This document shows, piece after piece, positions 3,061-47,690 of a stretch of 64,000 nucleotides of DNA. The notes beneath the pieces were generated by a model. That model worked only from the letters and a program-made list of their open reading frames with translations, ran no database searches and was not told the origin of the DNA. The position numbers were made by a program, and so were the translations under genes. The DNA lies in IMG/VR virus record IMGVR_UViG_3300047548_001122, positions 1 through 64,000 of that record; one strand, written 5' to 3'. Within the stretch, counting starts at the first letter, position 1. Every line of letters begins with the position of its first letter.

Positions 3061-3402
3061 GCAAGATGAAGTACCTACTGATGGACATTCTGGAACAATA
3101 TGGTGATGGCCGCAATATATCGCAAATATCTGATGATACAGGCCTACCCATGGATGTAGTGTTCAATATACTACAGCAGTATGGCGCCATGGTGGATGAT
3201 ACTACTATTGCAACACTACAATAGCTGGAACAAAATCGCTAAAAACGGCAGAGCCAAGGAGTCCTCTTGAAGCAGACTATAGTTCGTATAAGGTTCCTTA
3301 GCCTTCTTATTTTGGATCAATTTTCGAAACCCTCCAGAGAATCGCTGTAAAATTTTTTTCCGGTATCCGGCACTCTCTGGAAGTCGCATATAAAGGTAAA
3401 CT

Positions 3403-41242: not shown

Positions 41243-41268
41243 GAAAACCCACCGAAAGGTGGGTTTTC
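41243..41268. terminator. bidirectional terminator
   Basis: GAAAACCCACC-GAAA-GGTGGGTTTTC between convergent genes. Confidence 0.85.
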
Positions 41269-43046
41269 TATATTAATTTTTGAGCTAAAATTGGTAAATA
41301 ATCGTTTTGAGTAGTATCATCACTTAATGCAATATTATTGTTTTCAAAGGTGGTATTGTTGACTATGACGACAGATGATGAATCTAATATACTATCAGTC
41401 ATTACATCAAATGAACTCATTTCTATTCTTTCTCCAGAATCTGGTGACATTATATTTTTAAACAAAGAAGAAACTTTGTCTGGCTTCTTTTCCGCTTCTC
41501 TTAAATTTAAAGGCTCATTTCCAAACTTTGACCTTCTACTTTGTAGATAAGAAGTTCCTGATTGTTTCAACCAGTCATTATTTGCCAAATATATTTTTTG
41601 CATTTTTTCATTACCAGGAAACAGTATTTCAACCATAGATCGATTTGCTGTTCCTTCTCGCTCAGCCTGCAATACCTTAGGTACATTGTGAGCTCCTATA
41701 CCCCAAGCCATTCCTAAATTTGCTGGAGTAACAGGAATTTTATTTTTCTCAAAATATGCAACATTTCCCTTCATTAATTCTACTGATAATATGTCTTGAG
41801 TTTTTTCATTAAAAAGGGTATTCATAGATAAACCGGTTCCCGCCAATATGCCAGGCGCGTAACCTTTTTCTCCTTTTTTGGGACCACCAGTCAGTTCTGT
41901 TCCAAATAATGTAGATGGCATAAATTGAAGGGCTCCAACAGCGGCTTGTCCTGGACTAATTTTATCTCTCGCTAACTGAAATTTAAGAACTTCCTCTAAT
42001 GTAAATTCTGTTAATTTTTTTCTTTTTCCTAAAAATTGTTCTGAGTATTCTTCAGCTGTTTGTTGTTGTTTAAAATTTGGATTAAGTTTCTTCTCTTTAG
42101 TTATAGGATCTGTTATGAATTTTTTATAAGTAAATTCTCTTCTGCCTGTTTTTTTATCTACAGTACTTTCTCCAAATGCAATATCATAATTTTTTGCAGA
42201 TTCGGATGCTTTAATCTTATCAAATACCTCTTTTAAACTAAAATAACCAGCAGGAATTTCAACGTTTGGCTGTATTACTTCAGCAGCATTTGCTGATGGT
42301 ATAAGATTAGTTACACCTTCTGTTATATTTTTTCCTATATCTTCTACGTTTAAATTTTTAGCTTTTAACATTAGAGAATCTATTAGTTCATTAATAGAAA
42401 CTGTTAAATTATTAGTAAAATCATCAAAAGATTTTTTTAAATCTATATTTTTGACTTTATCGATTGCAGTGGAAATTCCTTTAAATGCAAGAAACAATAA
42501 TCCACCAGCACCAAATACCAATAACATAGTACTTAAAGAACTACTAGATTTATCACTCTCTATCTTCGTGGGTTTTTTTGACTGTTCTCTTAATTTAGAT
42601 AATTGGGATTCATATTGTTGTTCTCTTCTAGCTGCAGCTTTAAAATACATGTCAGCTTTTGTTGCTGCATCCATTTTTTCCAATTTCAATAGTTTTACTA
42701 CATTTTGTCTAATTACATTAAAATCTCTATGAATTGATGGAAGAACAGATAAATTTTTTGTAGTGAGTGTAGTATTGTATTGTATTTGCTCGAATAGTGG
42801 TTTAACGTCAGAAACATCCATTGAAGAATCTTCAATGGATTTTCCAGTGGTTCTAGATGTTCCAGAAGTTTTTGCTTTGAATGGTTTTAAACCAGGAAAA
42901 AGAGATGCTAATAAACCTTTCTGATTTATAATTTGTCTAGGATCAAACTTTTCTTTTAATCTCTCTTTAATGCCGCCAGCTAAAGATCCGGTGACACTAC
43001 CACCTTGACTTCTTCTGTGAGCAACTATATCGGATAATCTTGACAT
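41268..43046 (-). CDS. tail/baseplate-hub-associated protein with lysozyme-like domain
   Basis: IKASES..NY, AVGALQFMPSTL; N-terminus paralogous to next gene. Confidence 0.65.
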   Translation of the reverse strand: MSRLSDIVAHRRSQGGSVTGSLAGGIKERLKEKFDPRQIINQKGLLASLFPGLKPFKAKTSGTSRTTGKSIEDSSMDVSDVKPLFEQIQYNTTLTTKNLSVLPSIHRDFNVIRQNVVKLLKLEKMDAATKADMYFKAAARREQQYESQLSKLREQSKKPTKIESDKSSSSLSTMLLVFGAGGLLFLAFKGISTAIDKVKNIDLKKSFDDFTNNLTVSINELIDSLMLKAKNLNVEDIGKNITEGVTNLIPSANAAEVIQPNVEIPAGYFSLKEVFDKIKASESAKNYDIAFGESTVDKKTGRREFTYKKFITDPITKEKKLNPNFKQQQTAEEYSEQFLGKRKKLTEFTLEEVLKFQLARDKISPGQAAVGALQFMPSTLFGTELTGGPKKGEKGYAPGILAGTGLSMNTLFNEKTQDILSVELMKGNVAYFEKNKIPVTPANLGMAWGIGAHNVPKVLQAEREGTANRSMVEILFPGNEKMQKIYLANNDWLKQSGTSYLQSRRSKFGNEPLNLREAEKKPDKVSSLFKNIMSPDSGERIEMSSFDVMTDSILDSSSVVIVNNTTFENNNIALSDDTTQNDYLPILAQKLI

Positions 43047-44962
43047 TATTTTACATTCTTATACCATGGAGTTACTAAAAGTTCATCATAATAATCGGAA
43101 ATAAAATTTTCATTCCATACAGAAGCCGGTTTTGGAGAAAAAGGTGGTTGACCTTTTTTTTGTTGAGAATTGTTTATTATAACAACTGGTTCTGAAACTT
43201 CACTCGTTATACCTTTATTTTGTTGAGTCATTTCAAGTATTTTTTCACTAAAACTTTTTCTAGCAGCGTTTGCTGATTCTGTAATTACGTTTTTAAATTC
43301 TGTACCTTTTTCGGTTACAAAATTTAATGCGTTTCCTGCAACAGTTTTTCCTTGATTTTCTAAAGCATCAACTTCTTTTTGAACCGCTTCTTCTATACCT
43401 GTTGCTTTCCAAATTTTATTGGAGATTCCTGCCAATACGTTAGGATCATACTGTCGTAATTTTGCCCTCTCAATTTGATTTTTTAAAGTTTCATAGTATT
43501 GAGGTGCTAAAGTATCTTTCGCTATTTTATCAACATCATTCAACATACTATCTTGCAATTCCATTAGTCTTGATGAATAATTGCTTAATTCTTCACTTCT
43601 TCTCTTCTCAGCTTCTGGACCAACTGCAGCAGTGTGTTTCTTTAATTTTAGATATTTTTCAAGCAATTCTAAATATTGTTCTCTTTTGTCTCCCCAAGAA
43701 GTAGCTTGTTCTTTTGTCATATACAATAGTTGGGGGTCTTTTATTCCAGGAATTGCTACTTCGTATGGATATGGTGCCATCACACTTTTTCTCTTTTGAT
43801 TTCCTTCAATATTGTATATTTCAGATAAAGTTTTTTTATTTAAAAATTTAGCTGCTAAATTATCTGGTCGATCCATACTTTCGTACATTTTGCCAGTTTT
43901 TCCCCTTTGTATTAAAGGTTTTTCTGGAGTACCTCCGCCTCTTCTGTCGCTTGTTGGAAAAACAGTGTTTGATTCATCTTTTAGTTTATTTAAAAAATTG
44001 AAATTTTCTAGAGGATCTTCATTAGAATAAAATTCATCTATTATTTTTGCTCCTAATGCAGCAGCGATTACAGGAAGAGCATAAGGAAGTATTCCCATTG
44101 CTAACCTTGTCAAACCTAAACGTGAAAATAACCAACCTATTATGCTAGTTCCCAATGAAGTTAAAATTCTAAAACCTAATCCGGCACCTTTAAAAAACTC
44201 TAATATTTTTTTTCCAAAAAACACTTCAAGAGCTAATCCAAGTCCTGTTTTTAAAAATCCAGCAAGTCCTAAAATAGTGTCCATTAAAAAACCAACTGCA
44301 CTCGATATAACATTAATTAGAAGTTCACCTAATAATTGAAATGTTCCGATAATTGCTTTTCCTAATGTTACTATGGAATTTATTATTAATTTAATTCCTT
44401 TTACAATAGAGGATAAGATAGTTCCTAAAAGTCCTTTTTTATCATCTTTTTCACCATCTTTAAGATTACTTAATTCTCGACTTTTGTTTCTTTCCTTTTT
44501 CAATTCTCTTTCGTATTTGTCCTCTCGATCTTTTGCTTTCACAAAATACATATCGGCTTTAGTTCTTGCATCACCACCTTTCATTTTAACCAATTTTACC
44601 ATATTCTGACGTATTACATTTACATCTCTGTGTAGAGCGGGTAAAACCATGGTATTTTTTGCAGTTACTTTCGTATTAAAAGAAATGGTTTCTAATATAG
44701 GTTTAATTTCATCAAAAGATGTTCTCTGTAGCGAAGAACTTGACAATTCTTTTGCGGAAGTTTTAGCTTGATATGCTTTTAATCCTGGAAATAAAGCAGC
44801 CAATAAACCCCTTTGATTTACAAGTTGTCTAGGATCAAATTTTTCCTTTAATCTTTCTTTAATGCCACCAGCTAAAGATCCGGTGACACTTCCACCTTGA
44901 CTTCTTTTGTAGGCTATGATTTCAGACAATCTGTTTGAAGTAGGTTTATTTTTAGTTGCCAT
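43046..44962 (-). CDS. tape-measure-like (gp29-position) protein
   Basis: helical, Gly/hydrophobic central region, directly after gp26/gp51. Confidence 0.55.
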   Translation of the reverse strand: MATKNKPTSNRLSEIIAYKRSQGGSVTGSLAGGIKERLKEKFDPRQLVNQRGLLAALFPGLKAYQAKTSAKELSSSSLQRTSFDEIKPILETISFNTKVTAKNTMVLPALHRDVNVIRQNMVKLVKMKGGDARTKADMYFVKAKDREDKYERELKKERNKSRELSNLKDGEKDDKKGLLGTILSSIVKGIKLIINSIVTLGKAIIGTFQLLGELLINVISSAVGFLMDTILGLAGFLKTGLGLALEVFFGKKILEFFKGAGLGFRILTSLGTSIIGWLFSRLGLTRLAMGILPYALPVIAAALGAKIIDEFYSNEDPLENFNFLNKLKDESNTVFPTSDRRGGGTPEKPLIQRGKTGKMYESMDRPDNLAAKFLNKKTLSEIYNIEGNQKRKSVMAPYPYEVAIPGIKDPQLLYMTKEQATSWGDKREQYLELLEKYLKLKKHTAAVGPEAEKRRSEELSNYSSRLMELQDSMLNDVDKIAKDTLAPQYYETLKNQIERAKLRQYDPNVLAGISNKIWKATGIEEAVQKEVDALENQGKTVAGNALNFVTEKGTEFKNVITESANAARKSFSEKILEMTQQNKGITSEVSEPVVIINNSQQKKGQPPFSPKPASVWNENFISDYYDELLVTPWYKNVK

Positions 44963-44965
44963 CTT

Positions 44966-45103
44966 TTATCTCTTTTGTTTTTGTGCTGCTTTTAATCTTT
45001 CTGCTTCTTCTTCTAGATACCTCATTAACATATTCACATAGATATCTTTTTCCCACGGAATCAAATTTTCCAATTCAGTTAAACTGTATTTGTGATGTTG
45101 CAT
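44966..45103 (-). CDS. gp51: gp51-like baseplate hub assembly protein (frame open further upstream)
   Basis: hand-translated (HDNLQNHYHTNFAL)MQHHKYSLTELENLIPWEKDIYV. Confidence 0.8.
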   Translation of the reverse strand: MQHHKYSLTELENLIPWEKDIYVNMLMRYLEEEAERLKAAQKQKR

Positions 45104-45153
45104 TAGAGCAAAATTGGTATGATAATGATTCTGTAGGTTATCATGGCCAAAAA

Positions 45154-45882
45154 TTATCCGAAAAAACTTTGGAGTCCTTCCAACTCAATACTTTCATGAT
45201 ACCCACACTTATTACAATTGAAGTCCATTTGTTTTTTTAACTTCGGCATAGTATCAAAAAAGTCTTTAATTTTTTCTAAATCTTTTGATTGTAATGAATC
45301 TAAAAATTCTGTTAATTCTTCTTTTGTTGAATCTTTTGCATAATAAATGTTGTCTTTGTCGTAGATGTAATCGATGCAACTAATAATTAATTCTAAAACA
45401 ACATTGAAGTCATCGACATCACCTGTTTCTTTAATTAAACCCATTTTAGGATATTTCATAACAATACCTAAATTTTCACTCAATTCTATTTTATTTGAAT
45501 GTGATGGACCACTTTTGGGTTCTATCTCTAGAACATTCACTTCTATTTCTACAGAACTATTACATTTTTTAGGTTCTTCTTCTGTACCAACCTCATTGTT
45601 GCATCTGTATTTTAATTTGACTATTTCACCGATTGATCTTGCTCTCAAATTTAAAAATAGATATTCGATGTCAAAAGTTGGTAAATCTTTTATTTCAACA
45701 TCACTTATAACGCAATTGTTTAATACTTGAATAATTGTATCGACAGAATATTTTACATCATCCGATTCATATGCCATTAAAAATAACTTCTCTTCTTTTA
45801 CAGTAAAAGGTCTGAACTTTATCGCTTCTCCTGTTGAGTTTAATTTAATTTCATATACGGGAACATCAATTTTAGGTAACAT
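45154..45882 (-). CDS. gp26: baseplate hub subunit gp26
   Basis: LPKI..P.YE, FRPFTVKEEK, FDIEYLFLNLRARSIGE, LEGLQSFF. Confidence 0.9.
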   Translation of the reverse strand: MLPKIDVPVYEIKLNSTGEAIKFRPFTVKEEKLFLMAYESDDVKYSVDTIIQVLNNCVISDVEIKDLPTFDIEYLFLNLRARSIGEIVKLKYRCNNEVGTEEEPKKCNSSVEIEVNVLEIEPKSGPSHSNKIELSENLGIVMKYPKMGLIKETGDVDDFNVVLELIISCIDYIYDKDNIYYAKDSTKEELTEFLDSLQSKDLEKIKDFFDTMPKLKKQMDFNCNKCGYHESIELEGLQSFFG

Positions 45883-45893
45883 AGTATCTCCAT

Positions 45894-46658
45894 TTAAAAT
45901 CTAAAGAAATTTTCAAATAATTTTGTGCTTTTTGCCCCAAAGTAGGACGCTGCTGCTTCTCCAAGGTCTGTATATCCCTCATAGATAGGTTCATATTTTT
46001 GGTATGCGAATTGAACAGTTAATCTATGATAACCATCATCACCCCAAGCCAAAGGCATAGCAGCAACACCTATTGGAAATGCATCTATTAATTTTACTGC
46101 ATAGACTTGTTTAATAAAATCGTCATACTGAAGAATTTGGATATCTGTCATATAACGAGTTTCTTCATCATGCGAAAATCTTAAATTATTTGTAATCGGA
46201 TTCATAATTGAACTAATCCAAGAATCAAATAATTTTCTTTCATAAAAATCATTAGTGCATATAAATCCTAAGTTTATATCATTATATTGTTTTTGATATG
46301 GAACCTTAAATGAAGGTCCATAAATTTTTACATCCGCTGTTTGTAAAGTTTTACCTGGTAGTTCGGCAGTTTCACACTGTAACGACAAATATCTTGTTAT
46401 ATTAGGATTCGAACCTCTTTTTGTATCACCAGATGGCCAAGATTTTCCTGTTCTTTCATAAGTTGTCGCCCGACTGACCCAATCGGTAACATCGGTGACT
46501 AATGTGTTTGGTAAGTTTAGTAATTGTTCCAATACGTTACTGTCGATGTTGCCGTCAATATACCTTGGAATAGGAAGAATCATTTTAAATCTGTTTGGTC
46601 TAGCCAAATCACCTTTAGATTTTATATGCGAAAGAAATAAAGTTGGTGTAAAAGACAT
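45894..46658 (-). CDS. gp19/gp54-like tail tube or tube-initiator protein
   Basis: LARPNRF, CETAELPG, LIDAFP, LTVQFAY. Confidence 0.75.
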   Translation of the reverse strand: MSFTPTLFLSHIKSKGDLARPNRFKMILPIPRYIDGNIDSNVLEQLLNLPNTLVTDVTDWVSRATTYERTGKSWPSGDTKRGSNPNITRYLSLQCETAELPGKTLQTADVKIYGPSFKVPYQKQYNDINLGFICTNDFYERKLFDSWISSIMNPITNNLRFSHDEETRYMTDIQILQYDDFIKQVYAVKLIDAFPIGVAAMPLAWGDDGYHRLTVQFAYQKYEPIYEGYTDLGEAAASYFGAKSTKLFENFFRF

Positions 46659-47248
46659 TAAAATAATTCCTTTGAATCCTGAAATACTTGTGATTTTGAA
46701 ATAGGTTTTTTTTCTGAAGCAAAACTTTCTACTGGTAACAAAGCAGCAATATCCCATTCATCCGCACCAATTTCCAAAAATCTGGATTGTATTTGAGTAA
46801 ATAGATACCTTTTTATGCAGGCATTTTGTTCGAAAATTTTAGATGCAGATTTTAGTGTTTGATAGGACAATCTAAGTTTCGTGGTGGCGTCGAACTTGTC
46901 GTTCGTTGCATATGAACTTAGTTTATCCAGTAATATTAATCTTTGTTTTGGATGAATATAGTGAATATTCAATCCTAAAAATCCGTCTGAATAAGGTTCT
47001 ATTGGTAAGACTAAAGGGAAAGTATCATAATACTTCATTTTATCTTTAGTCTTTGGATCATAAACGAAAAAGTAAAGTTTACCAACAATACTTCTTTCAC
47101 GAAGTCTTGCCAAGTCATTCATCAAACTTGCTTTAGTTGGTTTTAAATTTGAAATTTTCGTGCGTAACCATTCCCTAGATTCTCTGGATCTAGAGTTGAA
47201 ACCTTCTTTTTGAAGTGATGCTTGAATACGGTCGATTAGATATGCCAT
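46658..47248 (-). CDS. gp2: DNA end protector gp2
   Basis: YDPKTK...YYDTFPLV, GFLGLN.HY, IKRYL. Confidence 0.9.
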   Translation of the reverse strand: MAYLIDRIQASLQKEGFNSRSRESREWLRTKISNLKPTKASLMNDLARLRERSIVGKLYFFVYDPKTKDKMKYYDTFPLVLPIEPYSDGFLGLNIHYIHPKQRLILLDKLSSYATNDKFDATTKLRLSYQTLKSASKIFEQNACIKRYLFTQIQSRFLEIGADEWDIAALLPVESFASEKKPISKSQVFQDSKELF

Positions 47249-47255
47249 CGACTAT

Positions 47256-47690
47256 TTATACTAGACCTAAATCTCTTTCTGTGAGTATCTTAAACTGCCA
47301 ACCTCTTTCCTTACAGAATATGTCAGCAGCTTTCCATTTTTCTTGGTTTATAGCATACGTCATAGATTCTTGTAAAAATCTTTTCGTTTTTCTTTTCTGT
47401 ACGGGTCTTTTAGTTTGGGCTTCAGGTTTCACTTCTAAAATATGAGTCATTACCGACCCGTCTTTTTTTTGAGTTTTTACTATGAAATCGGGAAAATAAC
47501 GATGCATTTTATTGTCTATTGGACTTCTGTATGGAATAAACAATTCTTCAGATGCCCACCAAACTACTCCTGGATTTTCATCCAAGTACTTCATAACTCT
47601 CAATTCCCAAGAGGAACGAAAGATTATGTTGGTAGGATCACCCTTATATTTTGAGGGATTGAGTGGAGTAAACTTTCCTGTATATGGCAT
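47256..47690 (-). CDS. gp4: head completion nuclease gp4
   Basis: KYKGDP..I.FRSSWE, WASEE, HRYFPDF, EVKP. Confidence 0.93.
   Translation of the reverse strand: MPYTGKFTPLNPSKYKGDPTNIIFRSSWELRVMKYLDENPGVVWWASEELFIPYRSPIDNKMHRYFPDFIVKTQKKDGSVMTHILEVKPEAQTKRPVQKRKTKRFLQESMTYAINQEKWKAADIFCKERGWQFKILTERDLGLV

What the first reader, a model, noticed from the sequence alone, without database searches (positions are those of the whole stretch)
44966..45180. Probable -1 frameshift fusing gp26 to gp51, like tail-chaperone G/GT
Seen (minus strand): gp26 ends AGT TTT TTC GGA TAA, containing slippery T-TTT-TTC (45166-45160). The -1 frame reads FFRIIFGHDNLQNHYHTNFALMQHHKYSLTELENLIPWEK..., so gp51-like sequence extends upstream of its first ATG, which has no clear SD. 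The next gene is tape-measure-like. Established: many long-tailed phages make two tail chaperones by a -1 shift just before the tape measure gene (lambda G/GT). Inference: the same device operates in this T4-like lineage, where the two are normally annotated as separate genes.
Basis: partly seen in the sequence, partly recalled or inferred. Interest (0 to 1): 0.65.

Follow-up and report, generated by a model that had tools for sequence, protein, structure and literature searches.

The report
Frameshift joins T4-like gp26 and gp51
In this freshwater T4-like phage and many of its relatives, the small "gp51" reading frame is very probably made as a tail added to gp26 by a programmed -1 ribosomal slip, the same device that makes the lambda G/GT tail chaperones, while T4 itself carries the fused form as a separate gene.

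Summary
On the minus strand a gp26-family gene (45882..45154, 242 aa) ends AGT TTT TTC GGA TAA. The in-phase heptamer T_TTT_TTC lies at 45166..45160. The -1 frame is open from 45184 to 44966 and matches the gp51 family from the slip site onward, 21 codons before its first ATG.

I read this as a programmed -1 frameshift that gives a 305-aa gp26-gp51 fusion beside the 242-aa gp26.
- All 85 related loci with the T-run heptamer (out of 89 complete related loci; 56 clusters at 80% identity) keep T_TTT_TTY in phase, and 83 have exactly one codon before the stop.
- The base before the run is always T, although the amino acid varies.
- The extension aligns without gaps from the slip site.
- Its pre-ATG part has dN/dS 0.27 in the -1 frame only.
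- T4-type gp51 is a natural single-ORF version: a gp26-like domain (PF12322) plus this extension.
- T4-type genes lack the slippery codons.
- The complete 214-kb genome holds one copy of each domain.
- The N-terminal domain of gp26 has the fold of the HK97 tail assembly chaperone.

No protein or RNA data exist. I found no description of this frameshift in the open literature that I could search. It is a new member of a known kind.

The parts
45154..45882 (-). gp26-family gene, zero-frame product of 242 aa. It plays the 'G' role. It has an N-terminal tail-assembly-chaperone-like domain (about residues 1-90) and a C-terminal CxxC region.
   Evidence: PF12322 at E 1.2e-63 and phrog_150 at E 2.2e-69. 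AF2 model with pLDDT 89.9. Fold matches to 3fgx, 3klu and 2ob9.
45175..45181 (-). SD-like GGAAGGA, 8 nt upstream of the heptamer. It is a candidate stimulator of the dnaX type.
   Evidence: An SD-like tetramer starts 11-15 nt upstream of the heptamer in 85 of 85 loci. The Glu codon there is GAG in 54 of 75 loci, against 25% GAG elsewhere in the same genes. The function is inferred.
45160..45166 (-). Slippery heptamer T_TTT_TTC, in phase with gp26. This is the proposed site of the -1 slip of two tRNA-Phe.
   Evidence: Among the 85 heptamer-bearing loci (89 complete related loci surveyed), 80 have T_TTT_TTC, 4 have T_TTT_TTT and 1 has T_TTT_TTG. The preceding codon is always NNT.
45154..45156 (-). 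Zero-frame stop TAA, one sense codon after the heptamer.
   Evidence: This spacing is kept in 83 of 85 loci.
44966..45160 (-). -1 frame extension: 64 codons plus the stop, starting with re-reading of C45160. This is the gp51-like 'T' part. The fusion product is 241 + 64 = 305 aa.
   Evidence: phrog_634 at E 4.6e-28. Gap-free alignment of 77 extensions. dN/dS 0.27 in this frame for residues 5-21. Aligns to T4-type gp51 residues 200-246.
43046..44962 (-). 638-aa gene that starts 3 nt after the extension's stop. It is the probable tape measure protein.
   Evidence: Position and size match the 605-656-aa genes in the same place in five related phages, one of them annotated as tape measure. It has a long hydrophobic, Gly-rich segment. 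The Atlas gave a lead to PF25671 T4_Tape_measure at 0.87. No HMM or BLAST support was found.
41268..43046 (-). 592-aa gene whose first ~158 residues are 60% identical to the start of the 638-aa protein.
   Evidence: weak phrog_4067 transglycosylase match.
45894..46757 (-). Tail-tube-like gene directly upstream (a baseplate tube initiator, gp54-like, in related records).
   Evidence: phrog_45 at E 6.7e-39 and PF23849. The same gene order is seen.

Best explanation
One gene gives two proteins.

Most ribosomes read gp26 to its stop and make a 242-aa protein. A fraction, with tRNA-Phe on UUU in the P site and on UUC in the A site, slip back one base on U_UUU_UUC. They continue in the -1 frame for 64 more codons and make a 305-aa gp26-gp51 fusion. 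The slip is probably helped by an SD-like GGAAGGA 8 nt upstream. The zero-frame stop one codon downstream may also help.

Both proteins share an N-terminal domain with the fold of a phage tail assembly chaperone. By analogy with lambda gpG/gpGT, and from T4 genetics (gp26 and gp51 are non-virion hub assembly chaperones), the two proteins would act on the tape-measure protein encoded next. The extension would link that complex to tube or hub proteins.

In T4-type phages the recoding is replaced by two paralogous genes: 26 (short) and 51 (with the extension in frame).

Shown here: the sequence anatomy, its conservation, coding constraint in the -1 frame, homology to T4 gp51, the fold, and the single copy in the genome.

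Inferred: that the slip occurs and how often, the role of the SD-like element, and the binding partners.
For: 1. Anatomy and family matches.

2. Survey of 89 complete related loci:
- 85 of them carry the in-phase T_TTT_TTY heptamer; they comprise the window, 77 IMG/VR contigs and 7 isolate phages (cyanophages, pelagiphage Mosig, a KVP40-like vibriophage, an Aeromonas 65-like phage, a rhizobiophage), and form 56 clusters at 80% and 12 at 50% protein identity;
- the 4 without it are the T4-type phage FL12 and 3 Ackermannviridae phages;
- 83 of 85 have one codon before the stop;
- a further rhizobiophage has T_TTT_TTA.

3. Selection at the nucleotide level. The preceding codon is always NNT (AGT, TCT, GCT, GAT, AAT or GGT, coding five amino acids), against a 65% background. 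The pair TTT TTC is used in 80 of 85 loci here, but in 4 of 86 other Phe-Phe pairs.

4. The extension aligns without a single gap from the slip site through the conserved domain in 77 sequences.

5. 19 of 85 loci, including the window and its nearest relatives, have no ATG, GTG or TTG before the conserved N-F motif. No early ATG anywhere has an SD-like motif.

6. dN/dS of extension residues 5-21 is 0.27 in the -1 frame and 0.9-1.9 in the other frames.

7. T4-type gp51 is PF12322 over residues 1-201 (E 1.4e-54) plus a C-terminus that aligns to the extension. Conceptual frameshift products align collinearly and gap-free across the junction with six T4-type gp51 proteins.

8. Where no shift is needed the codons are not slippery: T4-type gp26 has GAR TTC TTT, and the gp51 junction reads GTG TTT AAG.

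9. The complete 214-kb genome has one PF12322 copy and one phrog_634 copy.

10. Fold. VIA gives Z 7.7, 7.5 and 7.4 to 3fgx, 3klu and 2ob9 (the HK97 tail assembly chaperone), with the next unrelated hit at 4.6. Foldseek on the domain alone puts the same entries on top at probability 0.96-0.97.

11. A T4 review lists gp26 and gp51 as hub assembly chaperones (PMC3004832). One GenBank record names gp26 and gp51 'tape measure protein assembly chaperone'.

12. No indel at the T run in independent contigs.
Against: - No protein, ribosome-profiling or RNA evidence exists. No RNA run holds this phage.
- No conserved RNA structure lies downstream of the heptamer, so any stimulator other than the SD-like element is unknown.
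- 53 of 85 loci, mostly cyanophage-like, have an ATG at extension residue 4-8, so in those lineages a separate small protein could also be made.
- Ackermannviridae keep the homologous -1 ORF without a canonical heptamer, often with a TAATG overlap start. This shows the extension can apparently work, or be made, otherwise.
- The fold scores are moderate: Foldseek E about 0.04, and Z 7-8 is within the range the tool warns about.
- The tape-measure identity of the next gene is not shown by homology.
- The complex prediction gave no answer.
Confidence: 0.85

Rival explanations
1. There are two independent genes. The small ORF is translated on its own, from the ATG at 45103, from a near-cognate codon next to the stop (the TAATT context), or by termination-reinitiation. 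The T run is conserved only because Phe-Phe is conserved.
For: GenBank records annotate the two as separate genes. 53 of 85 loci have an early ATG. Ackermannviridae have a TAATG overlap and no heptamer. The usual overlap starts also give a -1 phase.
Against: - In the window clade no ATG, GTG or TTG precedes the conserved motif, and the near-cognate ATT is not conserved (AGT in several relatives).
- The region before the first ATG is under purifying selection in the -1 frame.
- The alignment is gap-free from the slip site.
- The NNT TTT TTC codon choice is not explained by protein conservation.
- T4 gp51 shows the extension fused to a gp26-like domain.
- No early ATG has an SD-like motif.
Confidence: 0.08
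2. The same fusion is made, but by RNA polymerase stuttering on the T6 run (one extra U in part of the transcripts) and not by ribosome slippage.
For: A homopolymer run is present and invariant. Four loci have T7. No RNA data are available to exclude this.
Against: - Six bases is short for polymerase slippage. From my own knowledge, the known bacterial cases use runs of about nine.
- Selection keeps the last base C in 80 of 85 loci. That caps the run at six, whereas TTT is the commoner Phe codon (74%) and would lengthen it.
- The run is always in the X_XXY_YYZ phase.
- An SD-like element sits at dnaX-like spacing.
Confidence: 0.05
3. It is an artefact or a decaying gene: a homopolymer sequencing error, or a recent frameshift mutation splitting a once continuous gp51-like gene.
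For: Homopolymer runs are error-prone. T4 gp51 is continuous.
Against: The same arrangement is found in 85 independently assembled loci and isolate genomes from many studies. There is no indel in independent contigs. Both frames are under constraint.
Confidence: 0.01

Closest known systems
Lambda gpG/gpGT, and the conserved tail-assembly-chaperone frameshift of long-tailed phages (Xu, Hendrix and Duda 2004; cited from my own knowledge and from the reference list seen)
   Same: - Two overlapping frames just upstream of the tape-measure-sized gene.
- A -1 slip at an X_XXY_YYZ heptamer close to the end of the first frame.
- A short and a C-terminally extended protein that share the chaperone domain.
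- Neither protein is expected in the virion.
- The chaperone fold (2ob9-like) is found in the N-terminal domain.
   Different: - gp26 is about twice the size of gpG and carries extra domains, including a CxxC region.
- The heptamer is T_TTT_TTC, not G_GGA_AAG.
- It sits in a T4-type baseplate/hub cluster.
- There is no sequence similarity to known chaperones.
- Binding partners are untested.
T4 gp26 and gp51 (hub assembly chaperones, Pfam PF12322)
   Same: Homologous. gp26 here and both T4 proteins match PF12322. The extension is homologous to the last ~50 residues of T4 gp51. The short and long forms correspond to gp26 and gp51.
   Different: T4 has two separate, divergently transcribed paralogous genes and no recoding. 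Here one gene and a frameshift supply both forms, and the genome has a single copy.
E. coli dnaX tau/gamma -1 frameshift (from my own knowledge)
   Same: A heptamer of identical-base triplets, an SD-like element about 10 nt upstream, and a zero-frame or shifted-frame stop close by.
   Different: dnaX also uses a strong downstream hairpin, and none is conserved here. In dnaX the shifted product is the shorter one.
P2 gpE/gpE+E' (the myovirus version of the same device; from my own knowledge)
   Same: A contractile-tail phage that makes two chaperone forms by a -1 shift upstream of its tape measure gene.
   Different: No detectable sequence relationship. P2-type baseplate context.

Membership tests
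Frameshifted tail assembly chaperone pair (lambda G/GT type) | A second ORF in the -1 frame overlaps the end of the first and lacks a start of its own. | tested here: met
   The -1 frame is open from 45184. The first ATG is at 45103, 21 codons into the conserved domain, with no SD.
Frameshifted tail assembly chaperone pair (lambda G/GT type) | An in-phase X_XXY_YYZ slippery heptamer near the 3' end of the first ORF, conserved in relatives. | tested here: met
   T_TTT_TTC at 45166-45160. Kept in all 85 heptamer-bearing loci out of 89 complete related loci (absent only from the T4-type and Ackermannviridae loci), with nucleotide-level selection.
Frameshifted tail assembly chaperone pair (lambda G/GT type) | Located immediately upstream of the tape measure gene. 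| tested here: inconclusive
   The next gene (638 aa) fits by position, size and hydrophobic Gly-rich segment, and by the annotation of a positional counterpart. There is no HMM or BLAST match. The Atlas gave a lead only.
Frameshifted tail assembly chaperone pair (lambda G/GT type) | Tail assembly chaperone fold. | tested here: met
   Residues 1-90: Z 7.7, 7.5 and 7.4 to 3fgx, 3klu and 2ob9, which cover 83-85 residues of chains 96-119 long. Foldseek probability 0.96-0.97 and TM about 0.5. The scores are moderate. Two aligners agree. There is no sequence-level match.
Frameshifted tail assembly chaperone pair (lambda G/GT type) | Both products are made at a set ratio and are required for tail assembly. 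| not testable with these tools
   No RNA or protein data. This needs proteomics, reporters and genetics.
Frameshifted tail assembly chaperone pair (lambda G/GT type) | The chaperone binds the tape measure protein, and the extension binds tube protein. | tested here: inconclusive
   Complex prediction of gp26 with the 638-aa protein gave no answer. The extension was not tested.
T4 gp26/gp51 family (PF12322 T4_baseplate) | Profile match above the curated cut-off. | tested here: met
   215.2 bits against a cut-off of 24.5, covering residues 8-241.
T4 gp26/gp51 family (PF12322 T4_baseplate) | gp51-type C-terminal domain. | tested here: met
   Present, but only in the -1 frame: phrog_634 at E 4.6e-28. 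It aligns to T4-type gp51 residues 200-246.
T4 gp26/gp51 family (PF12322 T4_baseplate) | T4 arrangement: two separate paralogous genes, 26 and 51. | tested here: not met
   One PF12322 match and one phrog_634 match in the complete genome.
dnaX-type -1 frameshift signal | Upstream SD-like stimulator at about 10 nt. | tested here: met
   GGAAGGA lies 8 nt upstream. An SD-like motif is present in 85 of 85 loci, with GAG enriched to 72% against 25%. Function was not tested.
dnaX-type -1 frameshift signal | Downstream stimulatory hairpin or pseudoknot. | tested here: not met
   Fold z-scores of -0.9 to -1.0. RNAalifold predicts no pair in 30 sequences.

The most novel reading that the evidence does not exclude
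The frameshifted gp26-gp51 gene is the ancestral state of the whole T4-like assemblage. It is seen in Kyanoviridae, pelagiphages, rhizobiophages, and KVP40-like and Aeromonas 65-like Straboviridae.

On this reading, T4's classic genes 26 and 51 arose when the recoded gene was duplicated and one copy fixed the fusion in frame. T4 would then be no exception to the near-universal G/GT rule of long-tailed phages, and the long-unexplained 'catalytic' gp51 would be its GT. The 64-residue extension would be the functional equivalent of the lambda T domain.
Probability: 0.55. Interest if true: 0.7.

Novelty: new member of a known kind. Interest (0 to 1): 0.62.

Why it matters
- It places the T4-like phages inside the conserved tail-chaperone frameshift rule. 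As far as I know, they were treated as lacking it.
- It gives T4 gp26 and gp51 a concrete reading: the short and long forms of one tail or tape-measure chaperone.
- It explains why the 'gp51' of cyanophages, pelagiphages and vibriophages is a 45-70-residue fragment that often has no start codon or is left unannotated.
- It would correct the annotation of this gene pair in hundreds of marine and freshwater phage genomes. Of the 10 records I looked at for this, 9 annotate the two as separate genes or leave the small ORF unannotated, and none joins them.
- T4, with two hard-wired genes, and its relatives, with one recoded gene, form a natural pair for asking why a fixed ratio of short to long chaperone is made by recoding.

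Tried and rejected
- **Downstream RNA stimulator.** Single-sequence folds were not better than shuffles, and RNAalifold on 30 sequences predicted no pairs. A short palindrome (GTCCATATGGAC) about 10 nt downstream in some cyanophage-like loci was seen in the alignment but is not general.
- **Sequence-level link of gp26 to solved chaperones.** None was found, with the single sequence or with a profile.
- **Whole-model Foldseek.** It gave nothing clear. The match appeared only with the exhaustive aligner and with the isolated domain.
- **Tape-measure identity of the 638-aa protein.** Pfam, PHROGs, PDB and tblastn against phages all gave nothing. The Atlas gave only a sub-threshold lead.
- **Complex prediction of gp26 with the 638-aa protein.** No answer. 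This is not evidence either way.
- **RNA evidence.** No RNA run holds this phage. The DNA contigs only confirm the sequence.
- **Rooting the gp26/gp51 duplication.** The tree gives three well-supported groups but is unrooted, so the direction of change rests on taxon distribution.
- **Literature.** Ten full-text searches found no description of a gp26-gp51 frameshift. The 2016 T4 baseplate paper and the 2004 frameshift paper are not held, so a prior mention there cannot be excluded.
- **Folding the fusion.** The fusion was built only inside scripts, for alignment.

Full report
**What is in the window**

On the minus strand the genes run: gp4-like head completion (47690..47256), gp2-like DNA end protector (47248..46658), a tail-tube-like gene (46757..45894), a gp26-family gene (45882..45154, 242 aa), a short -1 ORF, a 638-aa gene (44962..43046) and a 592-aa gene (43046..41268). 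On the other strand, from 47720 on, lies a T4-type baseplate cluster (gp48, gp53, gp5-like, gp25, gp6, gp7 and gp8 homologues). The window is part of a 214,237-bp virus record with direct terminal repeats, rated complete. It has 35% G+C and comes from a freshwater metagenome.

- gp26 ends AGT TTT TTC GGA TAA.
- T_TTT_TTC occupies 45166-45160, in the X_XXY_YYZ phase.
- The -1 frame is closed by TGA at 45187-45185 and then open to 44966.
- The upstream ORF matches PF12322 T4_baseplate (215 bits) and phrog_150.
- The -1 ORF matches phrog_634, 'baseplate hub assembly catalyst', at E 4.6e-28. The match starts at its residue 7, which is the slip site.
- The first start codon of any common kind in that frame is the ATG at 45103. 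It is residue 22 counted from the first Phe and has no SD-like motif.

**Comparative survey**

I fetched 80 IMG/VR loci with a gp26 relative (38-83% identity) and 11 isolate-phage loci.

- Of the 89 complete loci, 85 have T_TTT_TTY in phase: 80 with TTC, 4 with TTT and 1 with TTG. A further rhizobiophage has T_TTT_TTA. The four complete loci without it are the T4-type phage FL12 and three Ackermannviridae phages, treated separately below.
- In 83 of the 85 there is exactly one sense codon between the heptamer and the stop.
- The codon before the run is AGT, TCT, GCT, GAT, AAT or GGT. That is five different amino acids, always ending in T. In the rest of the same genes such codons end in T 65% of the time.
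- Elsewhere in these genes Phe is TTT 74% of the time, and Phe-Phe is written TTT TTC in only 4 of 86 cases. At this site it is written so in 80 of 85 cases.
- The 85 loci fall into 56 clusters at 80% protein identity and 12 at 50%, so this is not one inherited accident.
- The lineages include Kyanoviridae cyanophages, pelagiphage Mosig, a KVP40-like vibriophage, an Aeromonas 65-like phage and two rhizobiophages.

**The extension is coding from the slip site**

- 77 complete extensions align without a single gap from the two Phe through the conserved domain (H at position 8, L at 11, Y at 14, N-F at 18-19, then the QHHKYSLTE...PWER core).
- 19 of 85 loci, the window and its nearest relatives among them, have no ATG, GTG or TTG before the N-F motif.
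- 53 of 85 loci (mostly cyanophage-like) have an ATG at residue 4-8, but none has an SD-like motif.
- For extension residues 5-21, which lie beyond the gp26 stop and before any start codon, dN/dS is 0.27 in the -1 frame. It is 0.9 and 1.9 in the other two frames for the 18 start-less loci, and the picture is the same for all loci.

**T4 supplies a natural control**

- In a T4-type phage, genes 26 and 51 are divergently transcribed.
- The 249-aa gp51 matches PF12322 over residues 1-201 (E 1.4e-54).
- Its residues 200-246 align to the window's extension.
- Conceptual frameshift products from 12 loci, built in a script, align collinearly and gap-free across the junction with six T4-type gp51 proteins...S-F-F-R-I... 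against ...D-V-F-K-L-L....
- T4 gp51 is therefore the fusion written as one ORF, and T4 gp26 is the short form.
- In ten T4-type loci the slippery codons are absent. gp26 has GAR TTC TTT or no Phe pair, and the gp51 junction is GTG TTT AAG or similar.
- The window's genome has only one PF12322 copy and one phrog_634 copy. The long form can therefore come only from this locus.

**Function**

An AF2 model of gp26 (pLDDT 89.9) was aligned to 48,161 PDB representatives. The top three matches all cover residues 1-90:
- 3fgx, Z 7.7;
- 3klu, Z 7.5;
- 2ob9, Z 7.4, titled 'bacteriophage HK97 tail assembly chaperone'.

The next unrelated entry scores 4.6. A model of the domain alone (pLDDT 91.5) gave the same entries as the top Foldseek hits, with probability 0.96-0.97, TM about 0.5 and E about 0.04. 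These scores are moderate, but two methods agree and the matched chains are covered almost fully. A T4 review lists gp26 and gp51 as hub assembly chaperones absent from the virion (PMC3004832). One GenBank record calls gp26, gp51 and gp28 'tape measure protein assembly chaperone'.

The gene after the extension is tape-measure-like by position, by length (605-656 aa in five relatives, one of them annotated as tape measure) and by a long hydrophobic Gly-rich stretch. No homology search confirmed it.

**Mechanism**

- A -1 tandem slip of tRNA-Phe on U_UUU_UUC fits the phase.
- An SD-like motif lies 8-10 nt upstream in all 85 loci. It is GGAAGGA in the window and GAGGGN in most others. The Glu codon there is GAG in 72% of loci, against 25% elsewhere. 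This recalls dnaX.
- No downstream structure is conserved.
- Polymerase stuttering is less likely. The run is only six bases, and selection keeps C as the seventh base although TTT is the commoner Phe codon.
- Sequencing error is excluded by the survey and by independent contigs without indels.

**Limits**

- There are no RNA or protein data.
- The complex prediction gave no answer.
- Ackermannviridae keep the homologous -1 ORF with only a T_TTY tetramer, and with a TAATG start or ATT in its place. The extension may be made differently there.
- The tree of the gp26 domain separates T4-type gp26, T4-type gp51 and the frameshift-type genes with good support but is unrooted. That the frameshift is ancestral is inferred from its wider distribution.

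**Prior knowledge**

The chaperone role of gp26 and gp51 is known or proposed. Ten full-text searches found no description of a frameshift joining them, and of the 10 GenBank records I looked at for this, 9 annotate the pair as separate genes or leave the small ORF unannotated, and none joins them. Two key subscription papers could not be read.

**Verdict**

This is a real, strongly conserved recoding signal and a new member of the known tail-chaperone frameshift class. Confidence that the fusion is made is 0.85. Interest is 0.62.

Noticed in passing
window 44474-44935 (-) and 42573-43043 (-): The 638-aa tape-measure-like protein (residues 10-163) and the following 592-aa protein (residues 2-158) share a 60%-identical N-terminal domain, while the rest is unrelated. 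The read-laying tool reported the same repeat as a 'goes back' joint. It may be a common docking module for the chaperones or the hub.
   Followed up: partly
L005, L009, L010, L092-L111 (Ackermannviridae): The gp26 homologue is followed by a homologous -1 ORF, but there is no X_XXY_YYZ heptamer, only a conserved T_TTY at the aligned Phe. The small ORF begins with a TAATG overlap in several genera. In Kuttervirus that codon is ATT (TAATT) and no ATG precedes the conserved part. Whether this is reinitiation, an AUU start or a weak tetranucleotide shift is open.
   Followed up: partly
L003:2192-2941 (-), L115-L125: T4-type gp51 is a full PF12322 domain plus the ~50-residue extension, so it is a paralogue of gp26. 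The 'gp51' label on the 45-70-aa ORFs of cyanophages, pelagiphages and vibriophages covers only that tail.
   Followed up: yes
L007:3705-3869; S-CAM8 rows: Several GenBank records leave the -1 ORF unannotated (Aeromonas phage Aswh_1; Synechococcus phage S-CAM8 shows 'none' under the match). Others start it at an internal ATG that cuts off the conserved N-terminal part (S-RIM8 at locus position 3234).
   Followed up: partly
window 46658-46757 (-): The 287-aa tail-tube-like ORF, as listed, overlaps the end of the gp2-like gene by 100 nt. Its family match starts at residue 34, so the real start is probably a downstream ATG.
   Followed up: no
L048, L057, L059, L071, about 10 nt after the heptamer: A subgroup of cyanophage-like loci has a short palindrome (GTCCATATGGAC or GATCCATATGGATC) at the distance where a stimulatory hairpin would sit. 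It is not general and is weak (alignment).
   Followed up: no
window 47256-47690 (-): The gp4-like head completion protein matches the TnsA-like endonuclease N-terminal domain (PF08722, E 7.9e-24).
   Followed up: no
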